DNA of 64,000 nucleotides from Oculina patagonica (lineage: Eukaryota): NCBI RefSeq assembly GCF_052425735.1, contig NC_135768.1:23250001-23314000 (forward strand), written 5' to 3'. The first letter of the stretch is position 1. Each line of letters opens with the position of its first letter. Positions 23,445-62,919 of this stretch are shown in pieces. Under the pieces are notes generated by a model, which was given only the letters and a program-made list of their open reading frames with translations, did no database searches and was not told the DNA's origin. The translations under genes were made by a program, and so were the position numbers.

Positions 23445-26400
23445 TTATGCACTAAACGCTTCTTGGCAGGCCATAAGTGCATCCATGGCGTTCGGAGAGA
23501 TCCTGAGATTTTGTAGAGGAATACCAGAGAAGTCGTAATTATAATCCTTGTATGTGACCCATTTTCCATCATCTTCGCCTTTGGTGTGATGCCCGTCGTA
23601 TCTGCACACTCCAGACGAGTCCTGTTACGAACAAAACAAAACTTAAGTACATGTACTGGTGCATTTGAGACGTTGAAAAATTCTGACATTAGAATGCATA
23701 TTCTACAGTTAAAAGGGGCAGCGTGGATTTTTTCCGTAGGTATGGAAAGTCGAGTCAAATCTTCACGTCATAAATCAATTAATTAATTAATGAACGTTAT
23801 CTGGTTATGCGTAGGAAGAGGTTGCCCTCACGTGCCCGAGCCAGGGGGTCGTGTATAAAAACGCACGACAATAATAAGTAAAAAACAAAATTGCGGAGTC
23901 CCTCTAAAGAGACCCCGCAGCGTCACATCAACCCCCAAACGTGCAGTTCACCCTTTACAGGGACTATGTCACGGATTTAACCAGATTTTTGAACCGCCAA
24001 AATTTATATTTGCGTCGCATGAAACCTAAAAATAATAGTAGTCTATTTTTATTAAAAATGGCCATATTAGAGCACTGAATCTGTTAACTATCATCTTTGG
24101 CTGCGAATGGCTCGGATGGAAACGGATTGCAATTCGAAAAAGTTAGGCAAACGTTTTTAAATTGTTTCCGTGCGTCTTCAAAAAATCGATATTTATAGCC
24201 GTAGCTTGATTTCTATCCGCAAATTAAGATTACATCTTCATTTAGATGTTCAAAGATAATGTTTTATATGGTTTAAGTTGCCTACCACTTATTTCAGAAC
24301 AGTTTTGTCCAAAAAACTGTGAAATCCCCGTGACATAGTCCCTTTAACTCTTTCAATGGGTAAAACTCTTTTAACTAATTTGTACTGATCTGTCTGTGGA
24401 TTAAACCCAAATTGTAATTCTAGTCAAAGGAAAACTATTTAACAGTACTTTCATGCGGTACGGCTCACTGTGATCTTACTATTTGGTTTGAGTGAAATCT
24501 TTTTTTTTTAGGGTGTAACCATCCAAACGAAAGCTATTGAGCAGTTCTTTCATGTGGTTCTGTTAACGCCTGATGCAAGGGGTCGTTCTAACGTTTACCT
24601 CAGAAATGGAAACACTTATTGATGAAGTCCCTGAATGGACACACAGCAAATTGACATAAACCTCAGAATTACAAACCTTGTAGACGCGTGTGATGATCCC
24701 TTGATGAAATCTCATTCCGCCGATGTTGTTTCCTTCAGTAGCACCGTAACTTCCCTGAGGAAATAGTACGATGGAATCCACACCGACCTGGTCTTCACTT
24801 GGAATCTTATCGATAGCCACGTCCTGTAACCAAGAGAACACAAAGGTAACGCTATGTGGACATTTTTTGTTGTTGTTTTTCATTGTGTTTGGATGAAAGT
24901 TCTCAGTACTAAGTCTGTGGATGAAGACCCTGTGTGTGAGCATTCAAATGAAAGCTGTTGAGCAGTACTTTCATGCTGTACAAAGTGGTTCTGACTTTTA
25001 AGTTTGTGGACGAACTCTACTGAGTGACTATTTAAAAGAAAGCTTTTGAGACGTATTTTTATGAGGTTCTATATATTATGCTGTACAAGGTGGTTTTAAC
25101 TGTTAAGTATGTCGATGAAACCCTAGTGTGTGACCATTCAAATGAAAGCTATTGAGCAGTACTTTCAAATTTTACTGTTTAATATGTTGTACAAGGTGGT
25201 TCTAACTTTTGAGTCTGTGGATTATTCATAGAAAGCTATTGAATAGTTCGTTCATTTGGTACTGTTTGTTGTGCTGTACAAGGTGGTTCTAACTCTTAAG
25301 TCTGTGGATGAAACCCTAGTGTGTGACTATTTAAATGAAAGCTATTGAGCAGTACTTTCAGGAGGTACTGTTTATTATGCTGTACAAGGTGGTTTTAGCT
25401 TTAAAGTCTGTGAATGAAACCCTAGTGTGTGACTATTCAAACCCTAGTGTGTGACTATTCAAATGAGAGCTATTGAGCAGTACTTTCATGTGGAACTGTT
25501 TATTATGTTGTACAAGGTGGTTCCAACTTTTACTTCTGTGGATGAACCCTACTGTGTGACTATTCAAATGAAAGCTATCGAGACAAACTTTCGTGTGGTA
25601 CTGTTCATTCTACGTAGAAAGTTAAAAGTATCTAGATAAATCCCTTAACTGTGACTATTTACACGAAAGCTATTGCGTTTTGAGCGGAATCCTTATATAG
25701 CAGTTGTACACGAATTGTATACCTTGTAAGACTGAACTTTCCCTGTAGGATCTCCGTCGTCCCAGTCCACAGTGTAAGACATGGTCTCACGGTCAAAGCT
25801 CGCGATGGTCGCTCCGAAGTAAGCCGATCTTTGGTGGTGAGAGATCACGTGATCGCCTATTACAGGCGCGCGGTAACTTCCGGTTTCCTCCTTGAGGCCA
25901 AGCAAAGGTAAAATGGAGCCCCTGGAATTTGAAAAGAATCAATTTAATACACAGAACAGAAAGCGAATCTTGCACGTTTTAAGGTCGCGCAGGACCCTTG
26001 CTCATTAATATATTCATTAGCCAAATTTCTTGTTGGAGTGCTGTCTTGTAAAGCTTTAATTCACTACATTTTGAATATCGATTCCTCTAAAATTTAATAA
26101 GTATACCCAGGGATGATGGAATTACATCATGATTGTCCTTTTACTGAGAGATGACCGTTGTCTGTGATGTTACAAGCCCTTAAAAGTTTAACTGAAGATA
26201 ATGCGATTTTGTGTCCAAGTTTTCAGCTAGCACAGCGCACCAAATTAAATGATTATATAGCCTAGTGATAAGTCGTAACTTCTTTTGTGTTCCCACTAGA
26301 ACGAAATTTTCGATTTCAAAAACTGCTACAAGTTAATGGCTTCTAAGAGAGTAAAAATGTGAAATCTAAACTTTGAAACATGCTATCTTCATTTTGAGAA

Positions 26401-29400
26401 GGAAATTTAAAAATTCGCTCTAGCCAGAACACAATAGAGTACACCAAGTTTATGTTCCTCGCGAATCAACTCTTGAAATTCTATATCGGCGGGGAAAACT
26501 TGGACACAAAATTGCAGGTTTTGAGGCTTCCGAAGACCTTCCGAGTCGATGTTTACAACAACGTGTGCTTTATTTAAAGCTGTGAATCTAATTATGATAA
26601 TTCGCTATGTTCCAGCGCACGGGATGCGAGGCTGAGAACAATACCGTGTAATTACTTGTACAAAGAACTCTGAGAAAAAAATTCTCATGAATATTTCGTT
26701 TGTTGTCGGCTTCAGTCGTCGCAGTTCGTGCATACTCTTTAAATAAATACATACATAATGATTTCAAGGGTCCTGCGCGACCTTAAAATGGATTTCAGAG
26801 ACAAAGCCAAATGCAAATAAAACAATTGTGCTATTGTGCGAATGGAATAGGGGACTCAAAATGGCTAAAAACATATAAAAATGCTTTTTTAAAAGGAACG
26901 TTTTAGTTTAATTTTAAAAACGGGCACCTAAGAACCGTTCCTGTTGTCAGATGTCAGAGCATTCCAAAGCGTGAGGGCTGCCATAGAGAAAGACTTTGTG
27001 CCATAGGTCCTCAAATTAAAAAGGTGATGTAAAAAGATGATTTTTGGATGATGAGCGTAGCAGACGAGATGAAGTAACACCAATACTGTGTTGAAGTAAC
27101 ACCATTCACATTCTCCCAACAGCTTTTTAAAGAAATGTATGGATACCAGTAAGGAGAATCCAGGGATCCATATTCGTTTTTTCTCCAAGTCGTCAGCCGG
27201 GCAAGTATTTAAGACGACATACTTGCCCTGGCAAAATTTTACTTTCCCGCTCAAAAGTGAAGAATGGTGACTGTACAACAAGTTAATGAAAAGTTGACTT
27301 TTTTATGGTTATTACATGTAACACTGTATACAATTGTCATGAAATCTACGAGACAACGTGTCAGTTATAATAAAGTTTGATGCTTAAGTATTTGTTAATG
27401 AGACTTTCTACTAATGTCTACTTTGGCTGCTGACCTATAAAATTTCACTAAACATCGTGCCCCCAAGCGGCTTGTGATGTGGAGCTGGCGGAAGCGGACG
27501 ATGCAGGCACAAATGAAAGCCAGGGCCTCTTTGACTGCCATGACAGAAGAAAAGAACACTTTCGCTCTTCTTGTTCTATTGGTTTGCTTTTCTGAAGCGT
27601 TAACATTACTTTTTTCTTTGCTGGCGGTGCCACACCAAGATAAACAGCGCATTTTGATCAAAACATCAGCTGATGCGATCGCCTCGTGTTTTCACGGATG
27701 CAGCTGCAGTACAAAATATCAGCGGTTGACAGCTTGAAAATTGAGCCTGCGATGATTTCATTCATGGAAAATACCGCATCATCCAAGATGGCGGCCAAAA
27801 TTATGATTTTATCGCGACAGAAAGTTGCAAATTATTCTCTGTTTTCTAAAAGTTACGAATGAACGACAAGTGGTCAGAACGCAGGTAACTCATAAGAAAA
27901 TAATATATTTAATAAATGTTTTTTTTGTTTCATTAAGTCAAACTTAAGTCGTCCAGCGGACGAGTTTTTGTAATGTTTTGGTCGTCCGTACGATTTTTTA
28001 GTCGTCTCGGACGACCGGACGACTGTGAATATGGATCCCTGCAGAATCTGTTTATGTAGTGGGGACTTTCGATCGTTTTAATGGAGTTTCTTACAACATT
28101 TCATTAACATTTAGTGACTCTTTTGAATATCCACAAATGCCCTGGGGTTGGGCATTTGAACAGAAAATCTCAGCAAAGTTCAAATGCCGGCCTATACCCG
28201 GCCTCCCCCTCCTGCGGCTTAACATTGATAAGTGCATGACGTTTTCCTCTAGTGATTACACTGCTTTTGATACTTACTGAATTTCTTGTATTTTTTCCTG
28301 CAACGCGTCCTCTGAAGTGATATCCTGTAAGTTGATTGGTCGGTTCTCTTGGCCAGCCACTAACAAACCCACCACTGTGCTTCTCCAGTCATCGTCTGCG
28401 CCCACGATCACTGGCACCACCGGTTTCTTCAGTGACTGAAAACACGTCATGTAACATACTTAAATTCCAATAACGCAGGAAGAATAAATTTGCCGTTTGA
28501 ATCTTGACTTATTGACTGAAATCAACTTATGGTCGTATTTCTCGTTTGGCGATACACGAGGAAAATATACGACTCCTAAAAAACAATTCACATATTTCAA
28601 AGTCTAATTTAGAAGTACATTGTATTACCGTAAAATTCCAGTTATAAGCCCTGGGCTTATACAACTTCGTAAGGGGTCTTGGGTGGGCTTATAAACGGAA
28701 GGGCTTATATCTGGGAGGGCTTATAAGTCGAATTTAAAAAAAATGTTTTAAAACGCGCCACGGCAGTGAGGATCGAAATACGTCTATAAGTTAAAAAAGT
28801 CAAAATAAAGCAACATTTAGCCCTGTTCAGTACTGCCGTCCAGTAGAGGTGGGCTTATAGCCGAATTGTTTTTTTTTTTTGTTTCCAGGTAGATGGGCCT
28901 ATATCCAGGGGGGCTTATAAGCGGGGGGAGGGGCTTATAACCGGTATTTACGGTATTCTTTGTATTAGGCCTTGTGATATATATAGATTGTGGTGTACAA
29001 AATAACCTCCAGTCTGAATATTTTTCTGAGGAAGAAAGCACCAAAGGTGACAATGAAACAAAAATGAACAAGGGGGTTTGCTATTTTATTTGCCTCTTTT
29101 TCAAAACGAGTCTACGTGCGACACCATTCAAATGAAAATGAGTTGATTTGCATGAAAATGGAGATGTAGGTGAAACTTATTTTCATTTGAATGGTTTCGC
29201 ACGTAGACTTGTTTTGAAACAGAGGCAAAGGGTTACTCGGAAATAACCTATTATGGAATGATTAAGATGGAGATCCTGAACAATTTTGGGGCCTGGGTAA
29301 TATATCTACTGACTATATAGGGAAAGTGCTCTATATGCCTGGTAATAGTTCCTTCGAATGTAAATTTATTAACTGGAAAATCTTGGTTGATTTTCACTAT

Positions 29401-32400
29401 AACCAACTAACAATACATAAACAAATCATTATTTTGTGTTTACCTTGACAGCAAACTGGATTTCCATTCGGCAGTTCTCACTATTTGCATACTGTTTACT
29501 GACAAATGCCAACACTACTTTAGCTTTACCAAGTCCTTCAGCGATCTGTGCGAACTACAGTCAAGATGAAAAAACAATTAAGCGCATACACTAAAAGAAA
29601 CACTGAACTGAGTTTGATAGATCGACAGTGTTGTCAGAAACTTCATTCTATGATTAGTCCCGATCCTAAGAGTTCTCGGCTCAAAGAAGTCTGGGCTCTA
29701 TCGTGGGCGGTGACATCACCAAAGAGCACCCGCCCCAATGCCCCAAATGTCCCCAAAAAGCAGCAATGCTAAATACCCTCCAGACTCTTTAATAAAGGTT
29801 TAGTTGTTGTTGTTGTTTGTTGAAATGGCGAGAAGATCGCCTTTACGTGTACGTCACGACCAACTTAAGTTTTTTGAAGGTTGCGATGAAGTTTTCTTTT
29901 CTTTTTTTTAATTAAAAAACTATTGTTGTTGTTGTCTTAAGGTTGGTTCTCGTATGATCGCCCCAATCGTTTCTATCGCATCGATCGTTTGCAACATAGT
30001 TAGTAGAGGGGACTAACTATGTTTGCAACAACTGAGACGATCGTATGTGATGGAAGAGATCGGGGTTCTCATATAATCGTCCCGATCGCCTGGTATGAGC
30101 GAAGACCTACAAAATACAATCATTTTAGCTCTAGATCCAGCACAATGACAGCTTTCAATAAAAGAGCAAAACTTGTGGACTTCTATGTTCCAGTTATTGC
30201 AGTTTTACGGCTAAGAAGGGAAAGAGAAGCTAGAAGGATAGAAGGCGGGCGATTCAAGCGATCGTGATCGCCCCAATCGCCGCAGCCGTTAGCGATCATC
30301 TGTGCAATGTTATTAAATAATCGCGCCGATCGCAAGAAAACGTTTTGAAGTGACAGAGGCGATAGAAATGGTCAGGGCGATTATATGAGAACCAGGATTT
30401 ATGACTGTGTTATTAATGCACTTACCATGCCTAGTGATTCATCATTCTGATTAGTTGTTTTAAGCCGATCTGTGTCAATCCATAAAGAGAACTTGTTGTT
30501 CTTAGCCAGGCCGGCGTGAACTTTCCTGGGATCAGCAAACGATGATCCAATGAACTCTTGTACCTGATGACGTAACAGTGAGCACTTGTAACAAAACACT
30601 AGAAACTTTATAAACTACAATATCATGATCATTCTTATAAAATATCAATAGCGGATTTCTTAAGCAACGAACCCTTTTATAACGATCATTATTAAATAGA
30701 GTAATCTTAGAGCGGTTTTCACTTGAGTGTCGAAAGTAATTCCGTTTGTTTTTGTTTTGCATTTATATACTATGCTTAGTGATTGGCTAAAAAAACCCCG
30801 CGCCACTATCTCAGCCAATCAGAAGTAAAACCAAAACCAATCGTGTCTCGCTAGCGCACGTTTTCCCGCACTTCGTGTCGGCTACATGTATTTGCGTAGA
30901 GTTTTCATTGGTTCACTGGATTGTCTGCTTTTGGCTTTACGACACTCAATCGAAAATCGCTCTATATACGAGTTTTTTGACTGGGATTTTATGTTATCTT
31001 TAACTACTTTAACTACTTTCGTGGGAGGCGTGGTAGCCTAATGGTTAGTGCGCCGGACTCCGGATCGAGCGGTCCGGATTCGAGGCCTGGCCGGGGTCAT
31101 TGTGTTGTGTTCTTGGGCAAGACACTTTACTCTAATAGTGCCTCTCTCCACCCAGGTGTATAAATGGGTACCGGCGACATAATGCTAGGGGGTACCCTGC
31201 GATGGACAAGCATCCCATTCAGGGGGGAGTAGAAATACTCCTAGTCGCTTAATGCTATCGAAACCGGGATAAGCTCCGGCAGAATGGGCCACTTGGCTCG
31301 AGGCTTCCCCCTTTTTTTAACTACTTACTTGTTTGGATTTGTGTGCCTTTTCTGAATTCGTCCAGCAGTAGCTGATGAACACATCAGCTGGGCCCAGCAG
31401 CCTAGTTGCTGCAGGAGTAGCTTCTGTACTTTGTAAGTCTACGAAAACGAATTATAATATAACGTCTATAAACATTTGGCTGCAGCAATACATTTTTACA
31501 CAAGGAATAATTGATACTACTGCTGCCCCCGCTGCTATTTGATCCTCTTTTCAGCGCATTTTTTTACTACAGTAAGTTCTTTCCCTCGATATTTTGGCTT
31601 TTCTGTTTGCTCAATTGGTTGAAATTTAGCTTTTTGTTTCGGAATTTTTTTCAATAGCTCGTTGGCAGCTCGTGTTTTCTAATTCTCGTGTTGATAGAAC
31701 ATTACAAGGTTTCTGGCCTTCTCTTCTTCAAGATGGGAGGAGGACGTGCGATTTAAAACAAAAAATTCAGGATGAACTTGCAAAGCCTAGTTAATTAATA
31801 AACAAAATAAAGCGCAAATGCGATAACCCTGAAATATAAATGATCACGGAAATTTAATTACAGGAACGCGACCGCGACATCTTGACAATATTTTGCCGTG
31901 CTTTAGCTTATTTTTGATGAAATGAGTGACCTAAGTGAGTGTAGAATTAAGCAATAGTCAAAAGTTTTAAAACTCAGACTTGAGACCAGAAGTTTAAAAA
32001 AGATTTTTGGGCTGGGCGTCCAAGCAAAAATGACCAACTTGACAGCTAAGTCTAAAGGATGCCGAAAGATCTCTTCTCAAATTCGGCAAGTCATCTTGCA
32101 AATCTCCTCTGGTGGTGGATTTATCAAATCTTTTACCGGTACAAGTAGTTTGCGTCTGGCTAATCGCGGTTTTGGACTGACTGCTCTTGGACAAATGAAT
32201 TCAGTTAACTGCAGTAAGTTGGTTGTTTGCAGCTTACACGCGCCTGCTACGAATCACCCAATCAGAATACTAGGTTTCTTAATCTTACGTTGCTATTAAC
32301 CAATCGTCGAACAAAGATTTGATCACACCTCCCAATACTCCGTGCGAGCCCGCTTTATACGCGCCGGGACTATAAGGATGCCTCCCTGCGGGTGGCGAAA

Positions 32401-35400
32401 TCTAATCAATACCTTGTACACTTCCCAATCCATCAGGAACTTTTATCTGAGGAACACTCTTTTTGACAGCTTTTAGCAGCTCGGTCATTTTGGCATCCTG
32501 TACGTCCTTGTTGCTAAAGTGAATGTAAATTTCACCAGCGATAAGCAGCCCCACAACCGTCATCATCCAATCAAATGATCCGCTACCAACAACAACTGGA
32601 ATAACCGGTTTTTTAACAGTCTTCTTCGCGTACTGAAACTCTTGACGGCATATTTCATCCCTGCAAGGAAAGAAAGATGATCAACTCTGAGTTTCTTACA
32701 ACTTTTTTCAGTGTTCTCGGGAGTGGGGGGGGGGGGGGTGCTTAGGGGTGTAAATTATGAAGTTCAAATTTGCACGCAAGTCAACGCAATTTTTTCACAG
32801 TTCGGCCACCCAACGCAAGTGAACACATTTTTGCAATTTACTTCAAATACTGAATTGCACCTCGTAGCATTTTTAATGACTTTTTGCAAACTTGCGTGCA
32901 CACTAGAGAGTAAACTTGCGAGTCCGTATGGCCACCCAACTCAAGTCTGTACGCTCGTGTCATGTTGAATAATTTCTTCACTATTTATCACCGAGCTTAA
33001 ATTTACCATCTTTATTATTTACTACACATTTGATGATTTCGACATTGCTGATCCTAGCAGTATGCAGGACGCGTGTTACATATCAACCTAGTAAATGGCC
33101 CAGCTCACAACGAGTCTCTCGTAGCTCAGTTGGTTAGAGCGCCCAACCGGTGTCTGGGAGACCATGGGTTCGATTCCCGTCGGGGACTCGGATTTTTTCT
33201 TTGTCCCACGCTCGTGTCATGTTGAATAATTTCTTCACTATTTATCACCGAGCTTAACATTTACCATCTTTATTATTTACTACACATGTGGAACTTGCGA
33301 CCACTTGCGTTCCCGTTTGGTTAGTCCTCGAAGTCTTATGTAAAGGGCCCTAGGGAGCCACGCTTTCTTTTTTTTACATGCAGGATTTTAGGTATTATAA
33401 TTCTCATGTAGCGTGTCTAAACGAAACAGGTCACCGTGAAACTTCAAATTAACAATTGGTTCATGCTTAAGCATGTATCGCGTTATGGTGCACACAGTTT
33501 GGAGAGCCCAACCGAGAGCAACTCTAGCTCTTTGAGTGCTCTACAAACCTTCCAAGTGCACCATAACTCAATAGTCCACAGCTACAGTAAAAGCATGAAC
33601 CAATTACCCCATAAGCATCCCTGTCTGTTTCATATGGGAGTCCCTACTGGGGAGTGGATAATTTCTCATGTAGTTATTTGCTGAACCTTAACAGCATAAA
33701 ACTTCTATCACGGCTATGACATACCAAAATCACTACTTGTTCACTGTACTTACTGGACATATTCATCGCTGAGACAAGCCACAAACACCTTTGCTGTGTT
33801 AATCTGTTGCACAGTTTCAATCAGTGAGTCAGTCATTCGTTTTTCCTGATTAACCTTGGCCCCATACCCCTCCAGCTGACACCGGATGTCACGTGGATCG
33901 CAGATACTCGACATGATCGCTTCATCATAACTGGGCGGAGCCTCAGAAGGTGGCAACTCACAATTCCTTATGGCAGAAGGGCTGTTGGCCTGTTAATCAG
34001 ATAACAGATATTTTATTCACCTCTTTACAGCCAGTATTTTTGTGCAAAGATCCAATTTATGGATAGCAGCTACTGTGCACACTTTGGTACATGTGGTTAG
34101 TGAGGGGTGGGGAGGGTCGGGGTGTGACAGGAGGGTGGGAGCCCAGGAGAAAAGGGGTGGGAGGCGGGAAAGGAGAGGGTAGGAAGTGGGAGTCCAAAGG
34201 TGAAAGAACCAGGAGAAATTATACATGAAGAATTCATTGAAGTTTAACCATATTCCCATGCCATCGCACTTTTTCTTTTTTTGTATGTAATTTCTCAACC
34301 TCCTACCTTTCCTATTTAATGGTCCATACTAATCAGTTATAAAAGACTTTCTAAAGGCCCGTTCCAACATTAATTTCCCCATGTTGGTTTGTCACTCGCT
34401 CCTGACATCAAATTTGCCTTTTGAGGGTCGCGCTTGAGCAGCAAAAAAGAGGTCAACTTGAAGCAGGTCTACACACTGTACATGTATGTACAATTGTACT
34501 GTTCATAAATATATAGAACACAAATTTACAAACCTTTGTGTAAGAAATGAATATATCGCATGGGTTAATTCCACCGTCTACAGAGTTTTGTTGCTGATTA
34601 TTTCTTGCTGGCTCAGAGTCTTGAGCTGACAGAATGTCCAGTACATTGGGAGAGATGCGTAATTGAGAAAGCTCCATTCCATAAAAGTATAAACTGTAAC
34701 CCGAGTATGTGACCCACTTGTTGTCTAACTCTCCCTTAGTGTGTATACCGTCATAAACCTTCTGGCCTCTGTCACCATAATACACCTTAGTTATCCTTCC
34801 CTAAGTTAAACAAAATAATACAACTCATCTTCAGAATCCTTTTAGAAGAAAATTTTATTGTAAATACTTTACTCTCATGCTTCTAAAAAAGACCTATGCC
34901 CCTCATATGGAAGGCTTTTCAACACAAGTACCACTATAATATACCTCAATTTGGCATTTAAAACCTCCCACCCCCTCCCCCTCTTGCAACAAGAAACTCT
35001 TAAGAGCTTAAAACTGCGCTGGTCATGTGACCACTCAAGGGGAGCCATGTGGGGGGAATAAAAAATGCAGCCCCCCCCCCCCACACTATCCCCATTATGC
35101 GCGTCAAACTATGTTGTGACTGACAAACAGAATGATAAGAAAGACCTTGTGTGACATTTCATGGTTGACTAGTTCCATCTTAGTTTATGCTAATGCTGGC
35201 CAAATTCCCACGATCCCACGACGAAACGTCACTCAAGACAATAACAGAAGTTAATATGAGACCTATAATGTTCCGCCTGACTACAGACAGCAGATGGAGA
35301 GCAATTAATGTCTCAGTTATTGTTAGTACTATAGACCTTTTCATTTTGCAAAGGTCCATAACAGGGAGACGACCTTAAGGTAAGGTTTGGCCGTACCATG

Positions 35401-62778: not shown

Positions 62779-62919
62779 NNNNNNNNNNNNNNNNNNNNNN
62801 NNNNNNNNNNNNNNNNNNNNNNNNNNNNNNNNNNNNNNNNNNNNNNNNNNNNNNNNNNNNNNNNNNNNNNNNNNNNNNNNNNNNNNNNNNNNNNNNNNNN
62901 NNNNNNNNNNNNNNNNNNN
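62779..62919. other. Assembly gap (N run)
   Basis: 141 Ns adjoining the retrozyme array. Confidence 0.99.

What the first reader, a model, noticed from the sequence alone, without database searches (positions are those of the whole stretch)
23445..37499. Lipid-anchored Tudor-like/TIR/TIR/Tudor-like protein: candidate receptor-less TIR enzyme in innate signalling
Seen: 13 exons, mostly missed or fragmented in the ORF track, join into ~824 aa: MGCAPS, a coiled coil, module A, TIR1, TIR2, module A'. Both TIRs keep a Glu at the alphaC position (ICRQEF, NCRMEI). Module A begins with a Tudor/SH3-barrel pattern (KVGDPVLAMW...QYFTATIV...YTINWDD) followed by a second barrel-like unit. No TM helix, LRR, Ig, death or SAM domain is evident. 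Known: MGxxxS plus Cys3 is the myristoylation/palmitoylation consensus; the alphaC Glu is catalytic in NAD+-cleaving TIRs (SARM1, plant and bacterial TIRs); Tudor barrels bind methylated Lys/Arg or nucleic acid. Inference: a membrane-tethered, ligand-gated TIR NADase or signal generator with a built-in TIR dimer. I do not recognise this mirror architecture from any characterised protein.
Basis: partly seen in the sequence, partly recalled or inferred. Interest (0 to 1): 0.8.

Follow-up and report, generated by a model that had tools for sequence, protein, structure and literature searches.

The report
Lipid-anchored Tudor–TIR–TIR–Tudor signalling protein
This is a real, expressed coral gene for a probably membrane-anchored protein with two TIR immune-signalling domains flanked by two tandem-Tudor reader modules; the family dates to before the origin of animals and nobody appears to have studied it.

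Summary
Thirteen minus-strand exons (37499→23445), all 12 introns GT..AG, give an 824-aa protein. RNA-derived contigs confirm five central introns, and one 2465-nt contig joins both TIRs and runs on into both flanking modules.

The order is MGCAPS (myristoylation/palmitoylation consensus), two long helices, tandem Tudor, TIR1, TIR2, tandem Tudor. "Module A" folds as a tandem Tudor (pLDDT 91.6; SETDB1, UHRF1 and 53BP1 matches). Both TIRs are true TIR folds (Z about 15).

It is not a one-off. At least 55 fetched proteins of 600 aa or more share the same four-module order, in corals, anemones, Hydra, jellyfish, an acoel, a sea urchin, tunicates and choanoflagellates. All named ones are "uncharacterized". 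TIR1 and TIR2 split before choanoflagellates and animals diverged.

The αC Glu aligns with the Glu of the W-C-x-x-E-L motif in RPS4, AtTIR and Cat1. It is kept in 22/24 TIR2 but only 16/24 TIR1, and the usual Trp four residues before it is Asn or Ile.

My best reading is a membrane-tethered TIR protein with TIR2 as the likely NAD+-consuming centre, TIR1 as its partner and the Tudors as ligand or partner readers. Enzyme activity is unproven, and a TRAM/Mal-like sorting adaptor is a serious rival. The scan had not noted this family on other DNA.

The parts
37158..37499 (-). Exon 1 (aa 1-114): start codon, MGCAPSS acylation motif (37499-37479), and two long helices that are a likely coiled coil
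   Evidence: ORF with an in-frame stop 4 codons upstream. GT donor. tblastn to orthologues starting MGCAPS. The AF2 model of orthologue P0158 has helices 13-48 and 70-109. The exon 1 donor (37158) was chosen among three in-phase GT sites and was not checked with reads.
36157..36243 (-). Exon 2 (aa 115-143): linker and start of tandem Tudor A (…NLPKVGDP)
   Evidence: AG/GT sites in phase 0; tblastn
35422..35676 (-). Exon 3 (aa 144-228): first Tudor barrel of module A and start of the second barrel
   Evidence: Pfam Tudor_3 at 1.4e-5 on part of this exon (35452-35676, aa 144-218). 167 database hits with this exon, 14 at E<=1e-30.
34534..34800 (-). Exon 4 (aa 229-317): second barrel of module A, linker, first strand of TIR1 (DIFISY)
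   Evidence: Splice sites; HMM of module A matches aa 134-291
33754..33989 (-). Exon 5 (aa 318-396): TIR1, N-terminal half
   Evidence: The RNA contigs cover it to 33991; the true acceptor is at 33989 because the two preceding bases are ambiguous. Pfam TIR_2.
32413..32660 (-). Exon 6 (aa 397-479): TIR1 C-terminal half, including ICRQEF (Glu403 at 32641-32639)
   Evidence: RNA joints 32659/33753 (cut +1) and 31438/32413; Pfam TIR_2
31329..31438 (-). Exon 7 (aa 479-516): inter-TIR linker and first strand of TIR2 (DVFISYCW)
   Evidence: RNA joints
30426..30563 (-). Exon 8 (aa 517-561): TIR2 with the D-P-R, W-I-D and G-M-F motifs
   Evidence: RNA joints 30560/31326 (cut +3) and 29554/30426
29444..29554 (-). 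Exon 9 (aa 562-598): TIR2 βC-αC, S-E-N-C-R-M-E-I (Glu592 at 29464-29462)
   Evidence: RNA joints. Pfam TIR_2 at 3e-6, 28.2 bits against a cut-off of 28, on this exon alone.
28278..28435 (-). Exon 10 (aa 599-651): TIR2 C-terminal part
   Evidence: RNA joint 28435/29444; GT donor at 28277-28276
25723..25921 (-). Exon 11 (aa 651-717): linker and first Tudor barrel of module A'
   Evidence: Pfam PTM_DIR17_Tudor at 1.5e-4 and Tudor_3 at 3.9e-4; splice sites
24677..24823 (-). Exon 12 (aa 718-766): second barrel of module A', first part
   Evidence: Splice sites; tblastn at 78-90% identity
23445..23621 (-). Exon 13 (aa 767-824 plus stop): end of module A' and C-terminal helix
   Evidence: Splice site and stop codon; tblastn at 78-86% identity
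34612..36186 (-). Tandem Tudor module A (aa 134-291; spans exons 2-4 with their introns)
   Evidence: Family HMM at 232 bits. AF2 model of the orthologous module has pLDDT 91.6. Foldseek matches SETDB1, UHRF1 and 53BP1 tandem Tudors.
32447..34566 (-). TIR1 (aa 307-467; spans exons 4-6)
   Evidence: Family HMM at 233 bits. VIA-align matches SPARTA TIR (Z 13.8), RUN1 and RPP1 on model residues 299-461.
25903..31391 (-). TIR2 (aa 495-657; spans exons 7-11)
   Evidence: Family HMM at 238 bits. VIA-align Z 14-15 to Hydra TRR-2, SARM1, MyD88 and SPARTA TIRs on model residues 486-647.
23457..25875 (-). Tandem Tudor module A' (aa 667-821; spans exons 11-13)
   Evidence: Family HMM at 238 bits; 51% identical to module A

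Best explanation
Shown.
- The locus is a single expressed 13-exon gene for an 824-aa cytosolic protein.
- It belongs to a conserved holozoan family with a fixed order: an N-terminal membrane-targeting device (MGC..S myristoyl/palmitoyl consensus here), a helical region, a tandem Tudor, TIR1, TIR2 and a second tandem Tudor.

Inferred mechanism.
- The protein is tethered to the inner face of a membrane by dual acylation.
- It self-associates through the N-terminal helices.
- The two covalently linked, anciently diverged TIRs form a built-in asymmetric pair.
- TIR2 is the functional centre. It is the more constrained of the two and keeps the αC Glu and a block of fixed residues. It most likely consumes NAD+ (hydrolase or cyclase) to deplete NAD+ or to make a nucleotide signal.
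- TIR1 serves as its structural or regulatory partner. It keeps the Glu in this coral but has lost it in several lineages.
- The two tandem Tudors read a ligand or partner. They have a W/H, Y/F, W cage beside an invariant acidic W-D-D-x-D loop, plus an invariant polar patch on the second barrel. That binding event controls clustering and hence TIR activation.
For: One gene, expressed: RNA contigs join exons 5-10 with GT..AG introns, and their flank lengths fit the remaining exons.

Family:
- 167 hits with exon 3. The named members are corals, Nematostella, Actinia, Hydra, Rhopilema, Convolutriloba, Lytechinus, Ciona, Styela, Clavelina, Monosiga, Salpingoeca and Didymoeca.
- 55 of the fetched proteins of 600 aa or more have modA-TIR1-TIR2-modA.

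Anchor:
- 30 of 57 family proteins start with a PS00008-type MG motif, and 24 of these have a Cys at residues 3-6.
- Three more carry the motif just inside a probably mis-called start.
- S. helianthica has a PH domain instead, and one member has EF-hands.

Folds: the full model has pLDDT 79.6. Both TIR1 and TIR2 have a TIR fold (Z 12-15, with 22-24% identity to SARM1 TIR for TIR2). Module A is a tandem Tudor.

Glu position: the family Glu pairs with the Glu of W-C-x-x-E-L in RPS4 and AtTIR and in Cat1.

Best PDB sequence matches: they are NAD+-cleaving TIRs. The TIR2 profile hits Cat1 at 3.3e-6. The TIR1 profile hits RPS4 at 1e-3. Monosiga TIR2 hits SARM1 at 0.016.

Constraint: the TIR2 Glu is kept in 22/24 sequences. 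F, S, Y, W, N-S, D-P-R, W-x-D, G-x-F and S-x-N-C-R are fixed or nearly fixed. The TIR1 Glu is kept in 16/24.

Ancient pair: TIR1 and TIR2 are separated by a branch with 100/99 support, with choanoflagellate and animal sequences on both sides.
Against: - No enzymology exists for this family.
- The Trp four residues before the Glu, present in SARM1, RPS4, AtTIR and Cat1 in the printed alignments, is Asn in TIR2 and Ile or variable in TIR1.
- In HMMER's alignment to SARM1 the Glu falls beside a 3-residue insertion and is not paired directly.
- The top structural match is a non-enzymatic receptor TIR (Hydra TRR-2), and MyD88 scores almost as well. The TIR2 profile also matches the MyD88 αC region, where MyD88 has Gln at this position.
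- I could not read model coordinates, so the intramolecular TIR1:TIR2 pairing, the cage geometry and the coiled coil are all inferred.
- The folds were modelled on the orthologue P0158 (85.5% identical), not on the window protein itself.
Confidence: 0.45

Rival explanations
1. Non-enzymatic membrane 'sorting adaptor'. The protein would act like TRAM (myristoylated) or Mal/TIRAP (phosphoinositide-binding). It would sit on a membrane, use its two TIRs to bridge TIR receptors (TLR-like, IL-1R-like or TRR-type) into a higher-order TIR assembly, and use its tandem Tudors and helices to recruit downstream partners. No NAD+ chemistry would be involved.
For: - Within one family the N-terminal device alternates between an acylation motif and a PH domain. 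By established knowledge this parallels the TRAM and Mal solutions.
- The best structural match of TIR2 is the Hydra TRR-2 receptor TIR (Z 15.3), and MyD88 scores Z 14.4.
- The TIR2 profile matches the MyD88 αC stretch (E 0.014).
- The Trp at -4 is missing.
- TIR1 tolerates loss of the Glu.
- Choanoflagellates have TLRs but no MyD88 (PMC6040629), so an alternative adaptor is needed there.
Against: - The Glu is kept in 22/24 TIR2 domains over holozoan-scale divergence, together with an extended fixed constellation around it.
- The strongest sequence matches in the PDB are enzymes: Cat1, RPS4 and SARM1.
- Among the structural matches the highest sequence identity is to SARM1.
- Adaptor and enzyme roles are not mutually exclusive.
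Confidence: 0.3
2. The protein is mainly a reader or scaffold of methylated proteins (or of another Tudor ligand) at a membrane, for example in trafficking or cytoskeletal signalling. The TIR pair would act only as an oligomerisation module, with no role in immunity or NAD+ metabolism.
For: - There are two complete tandem Tudors with cage-like W/H, Y/F and W positions conserved in both copies.
- The same module occurs without TIRs in other proteins: 4 copies with HEPN_DZIP3 in Dendronephthya, and proteins made only of this module.
Against: - TIR2 is at least as constrained as the Tudors.
- TIR domains outside immunity or NAD+ signalling are rare (established knowledge).
- The fourth cage aromatic of 53BP1-type Tudors appears to be replaced by Asp. 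That mapping comes from my memory of the 53BP1 sequence, not from a tool.
Confidence: 0.12
3. Annotation artefact: two or more neighbouring genes, or a decaying pseudogene, read as one long protein.
For: Exons 1-4 and 11-13 were not checked with reads. One contig (run X4) carries about 2.4 kb more 5' sequence than the CDS needs.
Against: - A single RNA contig spans both TIRs and extends by the expected lengths on both sides.
- The frame is open over 13 exons with 12 canonical introns.
- Transcript-derived orthologues 77-86% identical over their full length have the same order.
- 55 proteins share the architecture.
Confidence: 0.02

Closest known systems
SARM1 / TIR-1 (animal NAD+ hydrolase)
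   Same: TIR fold with Z about 14-15, and the highest sequence identity among structural matches (22-24%). Shares DVFISY..NS at the first strand and F/W-I-D-V after strand B. Has a Glu on the αC helix. Both are cytosolic proteins that act through oligomerisation.
   Different: No ARM or SAM domains. Two TIRs instead of one. Tandem Tudors and a lipid anchor. Asn instead of Trp four residues before the Glu. Activity is unknown.
Plant TIR domains (RPS4, AtTIR, RUN1, RPP1) and the prokaryotic TIR NADases Cat1, SPARTA and AbTir
   Same: These are the best sequence-level PDB matches: RPS4 at E 1e-3 for TIR1 and Cat1 at 3.3e-6 for TIR2. The Glu pairs with the motif Glu of W-C-x-x-E-L. Structural Z is 12-14.
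   Different: Different partner domains (NB-LRR, CARF, Argonaute-APAZ). The family lacks the motif Trp.
TRAM (TICAM2) and Mal/TIRAP sorting adaptors
   Same: A TIR protein without a transmembrane helix that is placed on membranes by N-myristoylation (TRAM) or by a lipid-binding module (Mal). The family uses MGC..S or a PH domain in the same position. The properties of TRAM and Mal are from established knowledge.
   Different: TRAM and Mal have one TIR and no Tudor. They are vertebrate proteins and are not orthologues. MAL TIR gives Z 13.2 at 8% identity.
Tandem Tudor readers (SETDB1, UHRF1, 53BP1, SGF29, KDM4A)
   Same: Two packed β-barrels: Foldseek TM 0.55-0.57 to SETDB1 and 0.43-0.46 to UHRF1. 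The profile matches KDM4A, PHF20 and LBR Tudors. The cage-like aromatic positions are conserved.
   Different: Those are nuclear chromatin readers. Here the module is duplicated around a TIR pair on a lipid-anchored protein. The second barrel has its own invariant F-x-Q-G-x-Y … H … R-x-x-P-N signature with no Pfam model; only faint DUF4819 hits were found.
Mollusc Tolls with tandem TIRs; Dictyostelium TirE
   Same: Two consecutive TIR domains in one chain (PMC4929906; bioRxiv 10.64898/2026.04.30.722052).
   Different: Those are a transmembrane LRR receptor and an RCC1-repeat protein respectively. Neither has Tudors or a lipid anchor.

Membership tests
TIR domain superfamily (Pfam TIR_2 / STIR clan) | Sequence score above the Pfam gathering threshold | tested here: met
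   Window exon 9 alone gives TIR_2 at 28.2 bits against a cut-off of 28. Orthologue P0001 gives 82.7 bits with two stretches.
TIR domain superfamily (Pfam TIR_2 / STIR clan) | Flavodoxin-like TIR fold in both copies | tested here: met
   On the AF2 model of orthologue P0158, TIR2 gives Z 15.3-14 (TRR-2, SARM1, MyD88) and TIR1 gives Z 13.8-12.4 (SPARTA, RUN1, RPP1).
NAD+-cleaving TIR enzymes (SARM1, plant TIRs, bacterial TIRs) | Glu on αC at the position of W-C-x-x-E-L | tested here: met
   Paired with the motif Glu of RPS4 and AtTIR and of Cat1. Window residues are Glu403 and Glu592. Conserved in 22/24 TIR2 and 16/24 TIR1. That this is the catalytic residue in those enzymes is established knowledge.
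NAD+-cleaving TIR enzymes (SARM1, plant TIRs, bacterial TIRs) | Aromatic Trp four residues before the Glu | tested here: not met
   TIR2 has Asn in 23/24, and the 24th has a gap at that column. TIR1 has Ile/Asp/Glu/Arg and others. How universal this Trp is among active TIRs was not tested.
NAD+-cleaving TIR enzymes (SARM1, plant TIRs, bacterial TIRs) | BB-loop Gly and the acidic residue after strand B, as in SARM1 | tested here: inconclusive
   W-I-D pairs with SARM1 F-I-D in HMMER's alignment, but the G-x-F region aligns with a gap. The functional role of these SARM1 residues is from my memory.
NAD+-cleaving TIR enzymes (SARM1, plant TIRs, bacterial TIRs) | Measured NAD+ turnover | not testable with these tools
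   Needs recombinant protein and an HPLC/LC-MS assay.
SARM1 orthologue | ARM - SAM - SAM - TIR architecture | tested here: not met
   No ARM or SAM hit in the Pfam scans of six modA-TIR1-TIR2-modA members and of the acoel member P0201. The N-terminus is helices plus Tudors.
N-myristoylated / palmitoylated proteins (Src-family, Gα type) | M-G-{EDRKHPFYW}-x-x-[STAGCN]-{P} at the true N-terminus, with Cys next to Gly | tested here: met
   MGCAPSS with an upstream in-frame stop. 30/57 family members match, and 24 of these have a Cys.
N-myristoylated / palmitoylated proteins (Src-family, Gα type) | Actual lipid attachment and membrane localisation | not testable with these tools
   Needs click-chemistry labelling or imaging of G2A/C3A mutants.
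Tandem Tudor methyl-mark readers | Two Tudor/SH3-like barrels packed as one unit | tested here: met
   AF2 pLDDT 91.6, pTM 0.85. Foldseek probability 1.00 to SETDB1, UHRF1 and 53BP1 tandem Tudors. Pfam Tudor_3, SGF29_Tudor and faint DUF4819 hits.
Tandem Tudor methyl-mark readers | Complete aromatic cage | tested here: inconclusive
   The positions aligned to the KDM4A cage residues are W/H, Y/F and W. Which KDM4A residues form the cage is from my memory. Geometry could not be inspected because no coordinates were available.
TLR sorting adaptors (TRAM / Mal) | Binds TIR receptors and recruits downstream adaptors | not testable with these tools
   Only the membrane-targeting analogy was seen.

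The most novel reading that the evidence does not exclude
This is a pre-metazoan, membrane-anchored TIR enzyme of a new design. A covalent, asymmetric TIR1:TIR2 pair (a catalytic TIR2 and a partly degenerate regulatory TIR1) is clamped between two tandem-Tudor sensors. Binding of a methylated protein, or of a nucleotide or other cationic ligand, to the Tudors switches on NAD+-derived signalling at the membrane. On this reading the family would be an ancestral holozoan signalling or immune module. No vertebrate or ecdysozoan member appeared in the capped hit lists, so loss in those lineages is only suggested.
Probability: 0.3. Interest if true: 0.8.

Novelty: new variant of a known kind. Interest (0 to 1): 0.62.

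Why it matters
TIR domains are the shared currency of innate immunity in bacteria, plants and animals. In animals only SARM1 is an established NAD+-consuming TIR.

This family adds a second candidate, and it is older than animals themselves. It combines three things not seen together in any studied protein: a lipid anchor, a hard-wired TIR pair and two methyl-mark-type reader modules.

It is present in organisms that can be manipulated genetically (Nematostella, Hydra, Ciona, Salpingoeca rosetta). That makes three questions directly testable:
- What did TIR signalling look like before MyD88?
- Is there TIR enzymology in animals beyond SARM1?
- What can a cytoplasmic, membrane-bound Tudor read?

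For coral biology it is a candidate component of stress, pathogen or symbiont signalling.

Tried and rejected
- Two-gene or artefact reading: rejected by the RNA contigs and by the 55 proteins with the same architecture.
- TM helix: the only hydrophobic peak (1.67) lies inside the TIR1 fold.
- SARM1 orthology: no ARM or SAM.
- Literature: nine full-text searches found no description of a Tudor-TIR fusion or of any named member. The terms covered ecTIR-DC, TIR+Tudor+invertebrate, TIR+Tudor+choanoflagellate, two TIR domains+coral, TIR-DC/tandem TIR, locus tags and accessions, TIR+choanoflagellate+cnidarian+NADase, TIR+Tudor+HEPN, and Tudor+'TIR domain'.
- Gerdol et al. 2017 (the ecTIR-DC classification, which may list this family) is not held, so prior cataloguing cannot be excluded.
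- The supplements of the 2026 TIR-atlas preprint do not hold the EukProt ids of the choanoflagellate members.
- The protein-atlas search gave only generic bacterial TIR clusters at sub-threshold scores.
- afdb_swissprot gave no reviewed protein covering the architecture. TM by query was at most 0.16, and the Der GTPase hits reflect two Rossmann-like domains in tandem.
- phmmer with the N-terminal half of TIR2 found nothing in the PDB.
- The region-restricted homology search with TIR2 returned only family members, so no SARM1 sequence could be brought in for a direct profile comparison.
- The multi-Tudor proteins that hit module A (P0030, P0101 and others) show no signal peptide. I therefore did not link them to the secreted four-Tudor family noted elsewhere in this genome.
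- I did not submit the spliced window protein to any tool as typed letters. Folds were made on the orthologue P0158, and all window-specific analysis was done in scripts.
Full report
**1. The observation**

The window is eukaryotic DNA (about 40% G+C). It is from a stony coral, judged by the closest relatives. In the minus-strand frames between 37.5 and 23.4 kb there are thirteen stop-free segments whose translations continue one another.

Placing canonical splice sites gives 13 exons, 12 GT..AG introns and a 2475-nt CDS, that is 824 aa plus stop. The exons are:

| Exon | Window coordinates |
|---|---|
| 1 | 37499-37158 |
| 2 | 36243-36157 |
| 3 | 35676-35422 |
| 4 | 34800-34534 |
| 5 | 33989-33754 |
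| 6 | 32660-32413 |
| 7 | 31438-31329 |
| 8 | 30563-30426 |
| 9 | 29554-29444 |
| 10 | 28435-28278 |
| 11 | 25921-25723 |
| 12 | 24823-24677 |
| 13 | 23621-23445 |

An in-frame stop lies four codons upstream of the ATG.

**2. Transcript evidence**

I found RNA runs that hold the central 5.9 kb and laid four of them on 28200-34100.
- Their contigs differ from the window by about 3-5% in the exons, so they come from related species or divergent alleles.
- They skip exactly the five introns between exons 5 and 10, each with CT..AC on the plus strand (GT..AG on the gene strand).
- One 2465-nt contig covers exons 5-10 in order, with 928 nt on the 5' side and 533 nt on the 3' side. My exons 2-4 plus most of exon 1, and exons 11-13, need about 930 and 523 nt respectively.

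So TIR1 and TIR2 are on one mRNA, and both flanks are on it as well. The 'two separate genes' refutation does not apply.

They rest on splice consensus, on tblastn to transcript-derived orthologues and on the length arithmetic. The exon 1 donor (37158) is the least certain of them.

**3. What the protein is made of**

- Pfam already recognises single exons: Tudor_3 at 1.4e-5 on most of exon 3 (35452-35676); TIR_2 on exons 5, 6 and 9 (3e-6 on exon 9); Tudor models on exon 11.
- A search of 1.8 billion representatives with exon 3 returned 167 hits. About sixteen of them are 650-1057 aa long and match twice.
- The closest complete orthologue, P0158 (transcript-derived, 814 aa), is 85.5% identical to the window protein.
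- On orthologues Pfam gives two TIR_2 stretches and two Tudor stretches, and no LRR, Ig, Death, SAM or ARM.
- Family HMMs built here place the parts on the window protein as follows: module A at aa 134-291, TIR1 at 307-467, TIR2 at 495-657 and module A' at 667-821.
- Modules A and A' are 51% identical, and TIR1 and TIR2 are 34% identical.
- The strongest hydrophobic window lies inside the TIR1 fold, so there is no TM helix.

**4. Folds**

An AlphaFold2 model of P0158 with a 41-sequence family alignment has mean pLDDT 79.6. It shows two long N-terminal helices (13-48 and 70-109) and four well-defined domains.

*Module A.* Modelled alone, module A reaches pLDDT 91.6 and pTM 0.85, with two β-barrels and a C-terminal helix.
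- Foldseek matches it to tandem Tudor domains: SETDB1 (TM 0.55-0.57), UHRF1/UHRF2 (0.43-0.46), 53BP1 and SGF29-type.
- The sequence profile matches the KDM4A, PHF20, PHF20L1 and LBR Tudors.

*TIRs.* Both TIRs are genuine.
- TIR2 (model residues 486-647) gives Z 15.3 to Hydra TRR-2, 14.9 to SARM1 (22-24% identity, the highest among the matches), 14.4 to MyD88 and SPARTA, 13.8 to AbTir and 13 to the plant TIRs.
- TIR1 (299-461) gives Z 13.8 to SPARTA TIR and 12.4-12.7 to RUN1 and RPP1.
- The fold alone does not separate enzymes from scaffolds.

**5. The family**

*Members.* The named members are all 'uncharacterized' or 'hypothetical':
- corals (Stylophora, Acropora, Montipora, Desmophyllum);
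- other cnidarians (Nematostella LOC116604300, Actinia, Hydra with two paralogues, Rhopilema);
- the acoel Convolutriloba and the urchin Lytechinus;
- the tunicates Ciona LOC100182474, Styela and Clavelina;
- the choanoflagellates Monosiga MONBRDRAFT_27923, Salpingoeca rosetta PTSG_10079, S. helianthica and Didymoeca.

*Architecture.* Of the fetched proteins of 600 aa or more, 55 have exactly modA-TIR1-TIR2-modA.

*Age.* A maximum-likelihood tree of all TIR1 and TIR2 domains separates the two by a branch with 100/99 support, and choanoflagellate and animal sequences lie on both sides. The TIR pair, and by implication the mirror architecture, therefore predates the split of choanoflagellates and animals. 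The intron positions in A and A' differ, which fits an old duplication.

*Distribution limits.* No vertebrate, arthropod or nematode member appeared. The hit lists are capped, so absence there is not shown.

**6. The N-terminus**

The window protein starts MGCAPSS. This fits the N-myristoylation pattern (PROSITE PS00008) and has Cys3 for palmitoylation, as in Src-family kinases and Gα subunits (established knowledge).
- Thirty of 57 family proteins start with such a motif, 24 of them with a Cys at residues 3-6.
- Three more have the motif just inside a probably mis-called start.
- It occurs in cnidarians, in tunicates (MGSSSS, MGSSGSK) and in choanoflagellates (MGCGASV, MGQKQSK).
- Where it is missing, S. 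helianthica has a PH domain and another member has EF-hands. Medusozoan members add a Di19-type zinc finger behind the MGC motif.

Membrane targeting is thus a family trait achieved in more than one way. Actual lipidation was not tested.

**7. The catalytic question**

*Where the Glu aligns.*
- The TIR1 profile aligns e-c-r-q-E-f with W-C-V-R-E-L of RPS4 and with W-C-L-D-E-L of AtTIR.
- TIR2 of the coral orthologue and of Monosiga aligns S-E-N-C-R-M/T-E with S-D-W-C-W-D-E of Cat1.
- By established knowledge this motif Glu is the catalytic residue of NAD+-cleaving TIRs.

*Nearest sequence relatives in the PDB.* They are enzymes:
- Cat1 at 3.3e-6 for the TIR2 profile;
- RPS4 at 1e-3 for the TIR1 profile;
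- Cat1 at 2e-4 and SARM1 TIR at 0.016 for Monosiga TIR2, with DVFISY..NS and W/F-I-D-V shared.

*Conservation.*
- The TIR2 Glu is kept in 22 of 24 sequences. It sits in a block of fixed or nearly fixed residues: F, S, Y, C, W, N, S; D-P-R; W-x-D; G-[ML]-F; S..Y..S-x-N-C-R-M-E-x-Q-F-A.
- The TIR1 Glu is kept in 16 of 24. It is Gln, Leu, Val or His in most choanoflagellate members and in one Hydra paralogue.
- TIR2 is therefore the better candidate for an active site, and TIR1 looks like a partner that can lose it.

*Against an enzyme.*
- The Trp four residues before the Glu is Asn in TIR2 (23 of 24; the other sequence has a gap there) and variable in TIR1.
- HMMER's alignment to SARM1 puts the Glu next to a 3-residue insertion rather than opposite SARM1's Glu.
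- The same αC stretch also matches MyD88, which has Gln at this position.

I put NAD+ chemistry at a little under one half.

**8. The Tudor modules**

In both A and A' the positions that align to the KDM4A cage are W/H, Y/F and W, next to an invariant acidic loop W-D-D-x-D-[PT]-[TS]-G-R. Which KDM4A residues form the cage is from my memory.

The second barrel carries its own invariant set: F-x-Q-G-x-Y, G, H-x-G, H-T-K-G, R-x-x-P-N. It has no Pfam model beyond faint DUF4819 hits. A cationic ligand such as methyl-Lys or methyl-Arg is the default guess. The polar invariant patch leaves room for something else, but I could not inspect coordinates.

The same module is reused without TIRs. An octocoral protein has a DZIP3-type HEPN domain and four copies of it, and some proteins consist only of this module.

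**9. Comparison with what is known**

- It works most like a TIR signalling protein that needs no receptor ectodomain.
- It is not a SARM1 orthologue, because it has no ARM or SAM.
- It is not a TLR or IL-1R, because it has no TM, LRR or Ig.
- It is not MyD88, because it has no Death domain.
- Its way of reaching membranes parallels TRAM (myristoyl) and Mal (lipid-binding domain). This is the basis of the main rival explanation.
- Tandem TIRs are known in mollusc Tolls (PMC4929906) and in Dictyostelium TirE (bioRxiv 10.64898/2026.04.30.722052), but in other contexts.
- That preprint also states that several eukaryote-only TIR clades common in cnidarians are wholly uncharacterised. This family may sit in one of them, but I could not verify that.
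- Richter et al. 2018 list Ank, Arm and SH2 as partners of choanoflagellate TIRs, not Tudor.
- Nine full-text searches found no paper on a Tudor-TIR protein or on any named member.
- The ecTIR-DC catalogue of Gerdol et al. 2017 is not held, so a bare listing there cannot be excluded.
- No reviewed UniProt structure covers the architecture.

**10. Verdict**

The architecture, the anchor motif, the Glu positions and the lack of a characterised counterpart all hold. 'NADase' and 'ligand-gated' remain hypotheses with concrete caveats.

The finding is not a peculiarity of this genome. It is a conserved, pre-metazoan family that has gone unstudied, and I rate it as a new variant of a known kind (TIR signalling proteins) with interest 0.62. 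The scan's earlier notes did not hold this family. They do record other unusual Tudor proteins in the same coral genome.

Noticed in passing
window 33114-33189 (+), inside intron 5: A tRNA-Thr(GGU)-like element (ARAGORN; Rfam tRNA at 39.5 bits). It sits in a repeat whose RNA-contig depth is in the thousands (32928-33321). It is probably a tRNA-derived SINE rather than a working tRNA gene.
   Followed up: partly
window 28594-29381 and 30564-31351 (introns 9 and 7): Intronic repeats with very high summed RNA-contig depth (up to about 32,000) and many loose ends. They are likely abundant transposable-element families expressed elsewhere in the genome.
   Followed up: no
window 28359-33991 (run X4, contig of 4255 nt): One RNA contig carries about 3.3 kb on the 5' side of exon 5, roughly 2.4 kb more than the CDS requires. 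This could be a long 5' UTR, a retained intron or read-through from a neighbour.
   Followed up: no
P0152 (Stylophora XP_022808838) and P0002 (Acropora cervicornis KAK2552504): Public gene models of this family are partly wrong. The Stylophora RefSeq model replaces the middle of TIR2 by an unrelated stretch, and the Acropora model lacks several exons, when compared with the transcript-derived P0001.
   Followed up: partly
P0203 (Dendronephthya gigantea LOC114526443, 1008 aa): The same tandem-Tudor module occurs four times behind a DZIP3-type HEPN domain, with no TIR. The module is therefore reused with another effector-type domain in cnidarians.
   Followed up: partly
window 28277-33991, exons 5-10: All RNA contigs differ from the window at 3-5% of exon positions, mostly by transitions. 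The runs (organisms A and B) are not from the sequenced individual, so expression in this exact species is inferred from close relatives.
   Followed up: no
window 62779-62919: A run of 141 N (assembly gap or masked stretch). It was left untouched.
   Followed up: no
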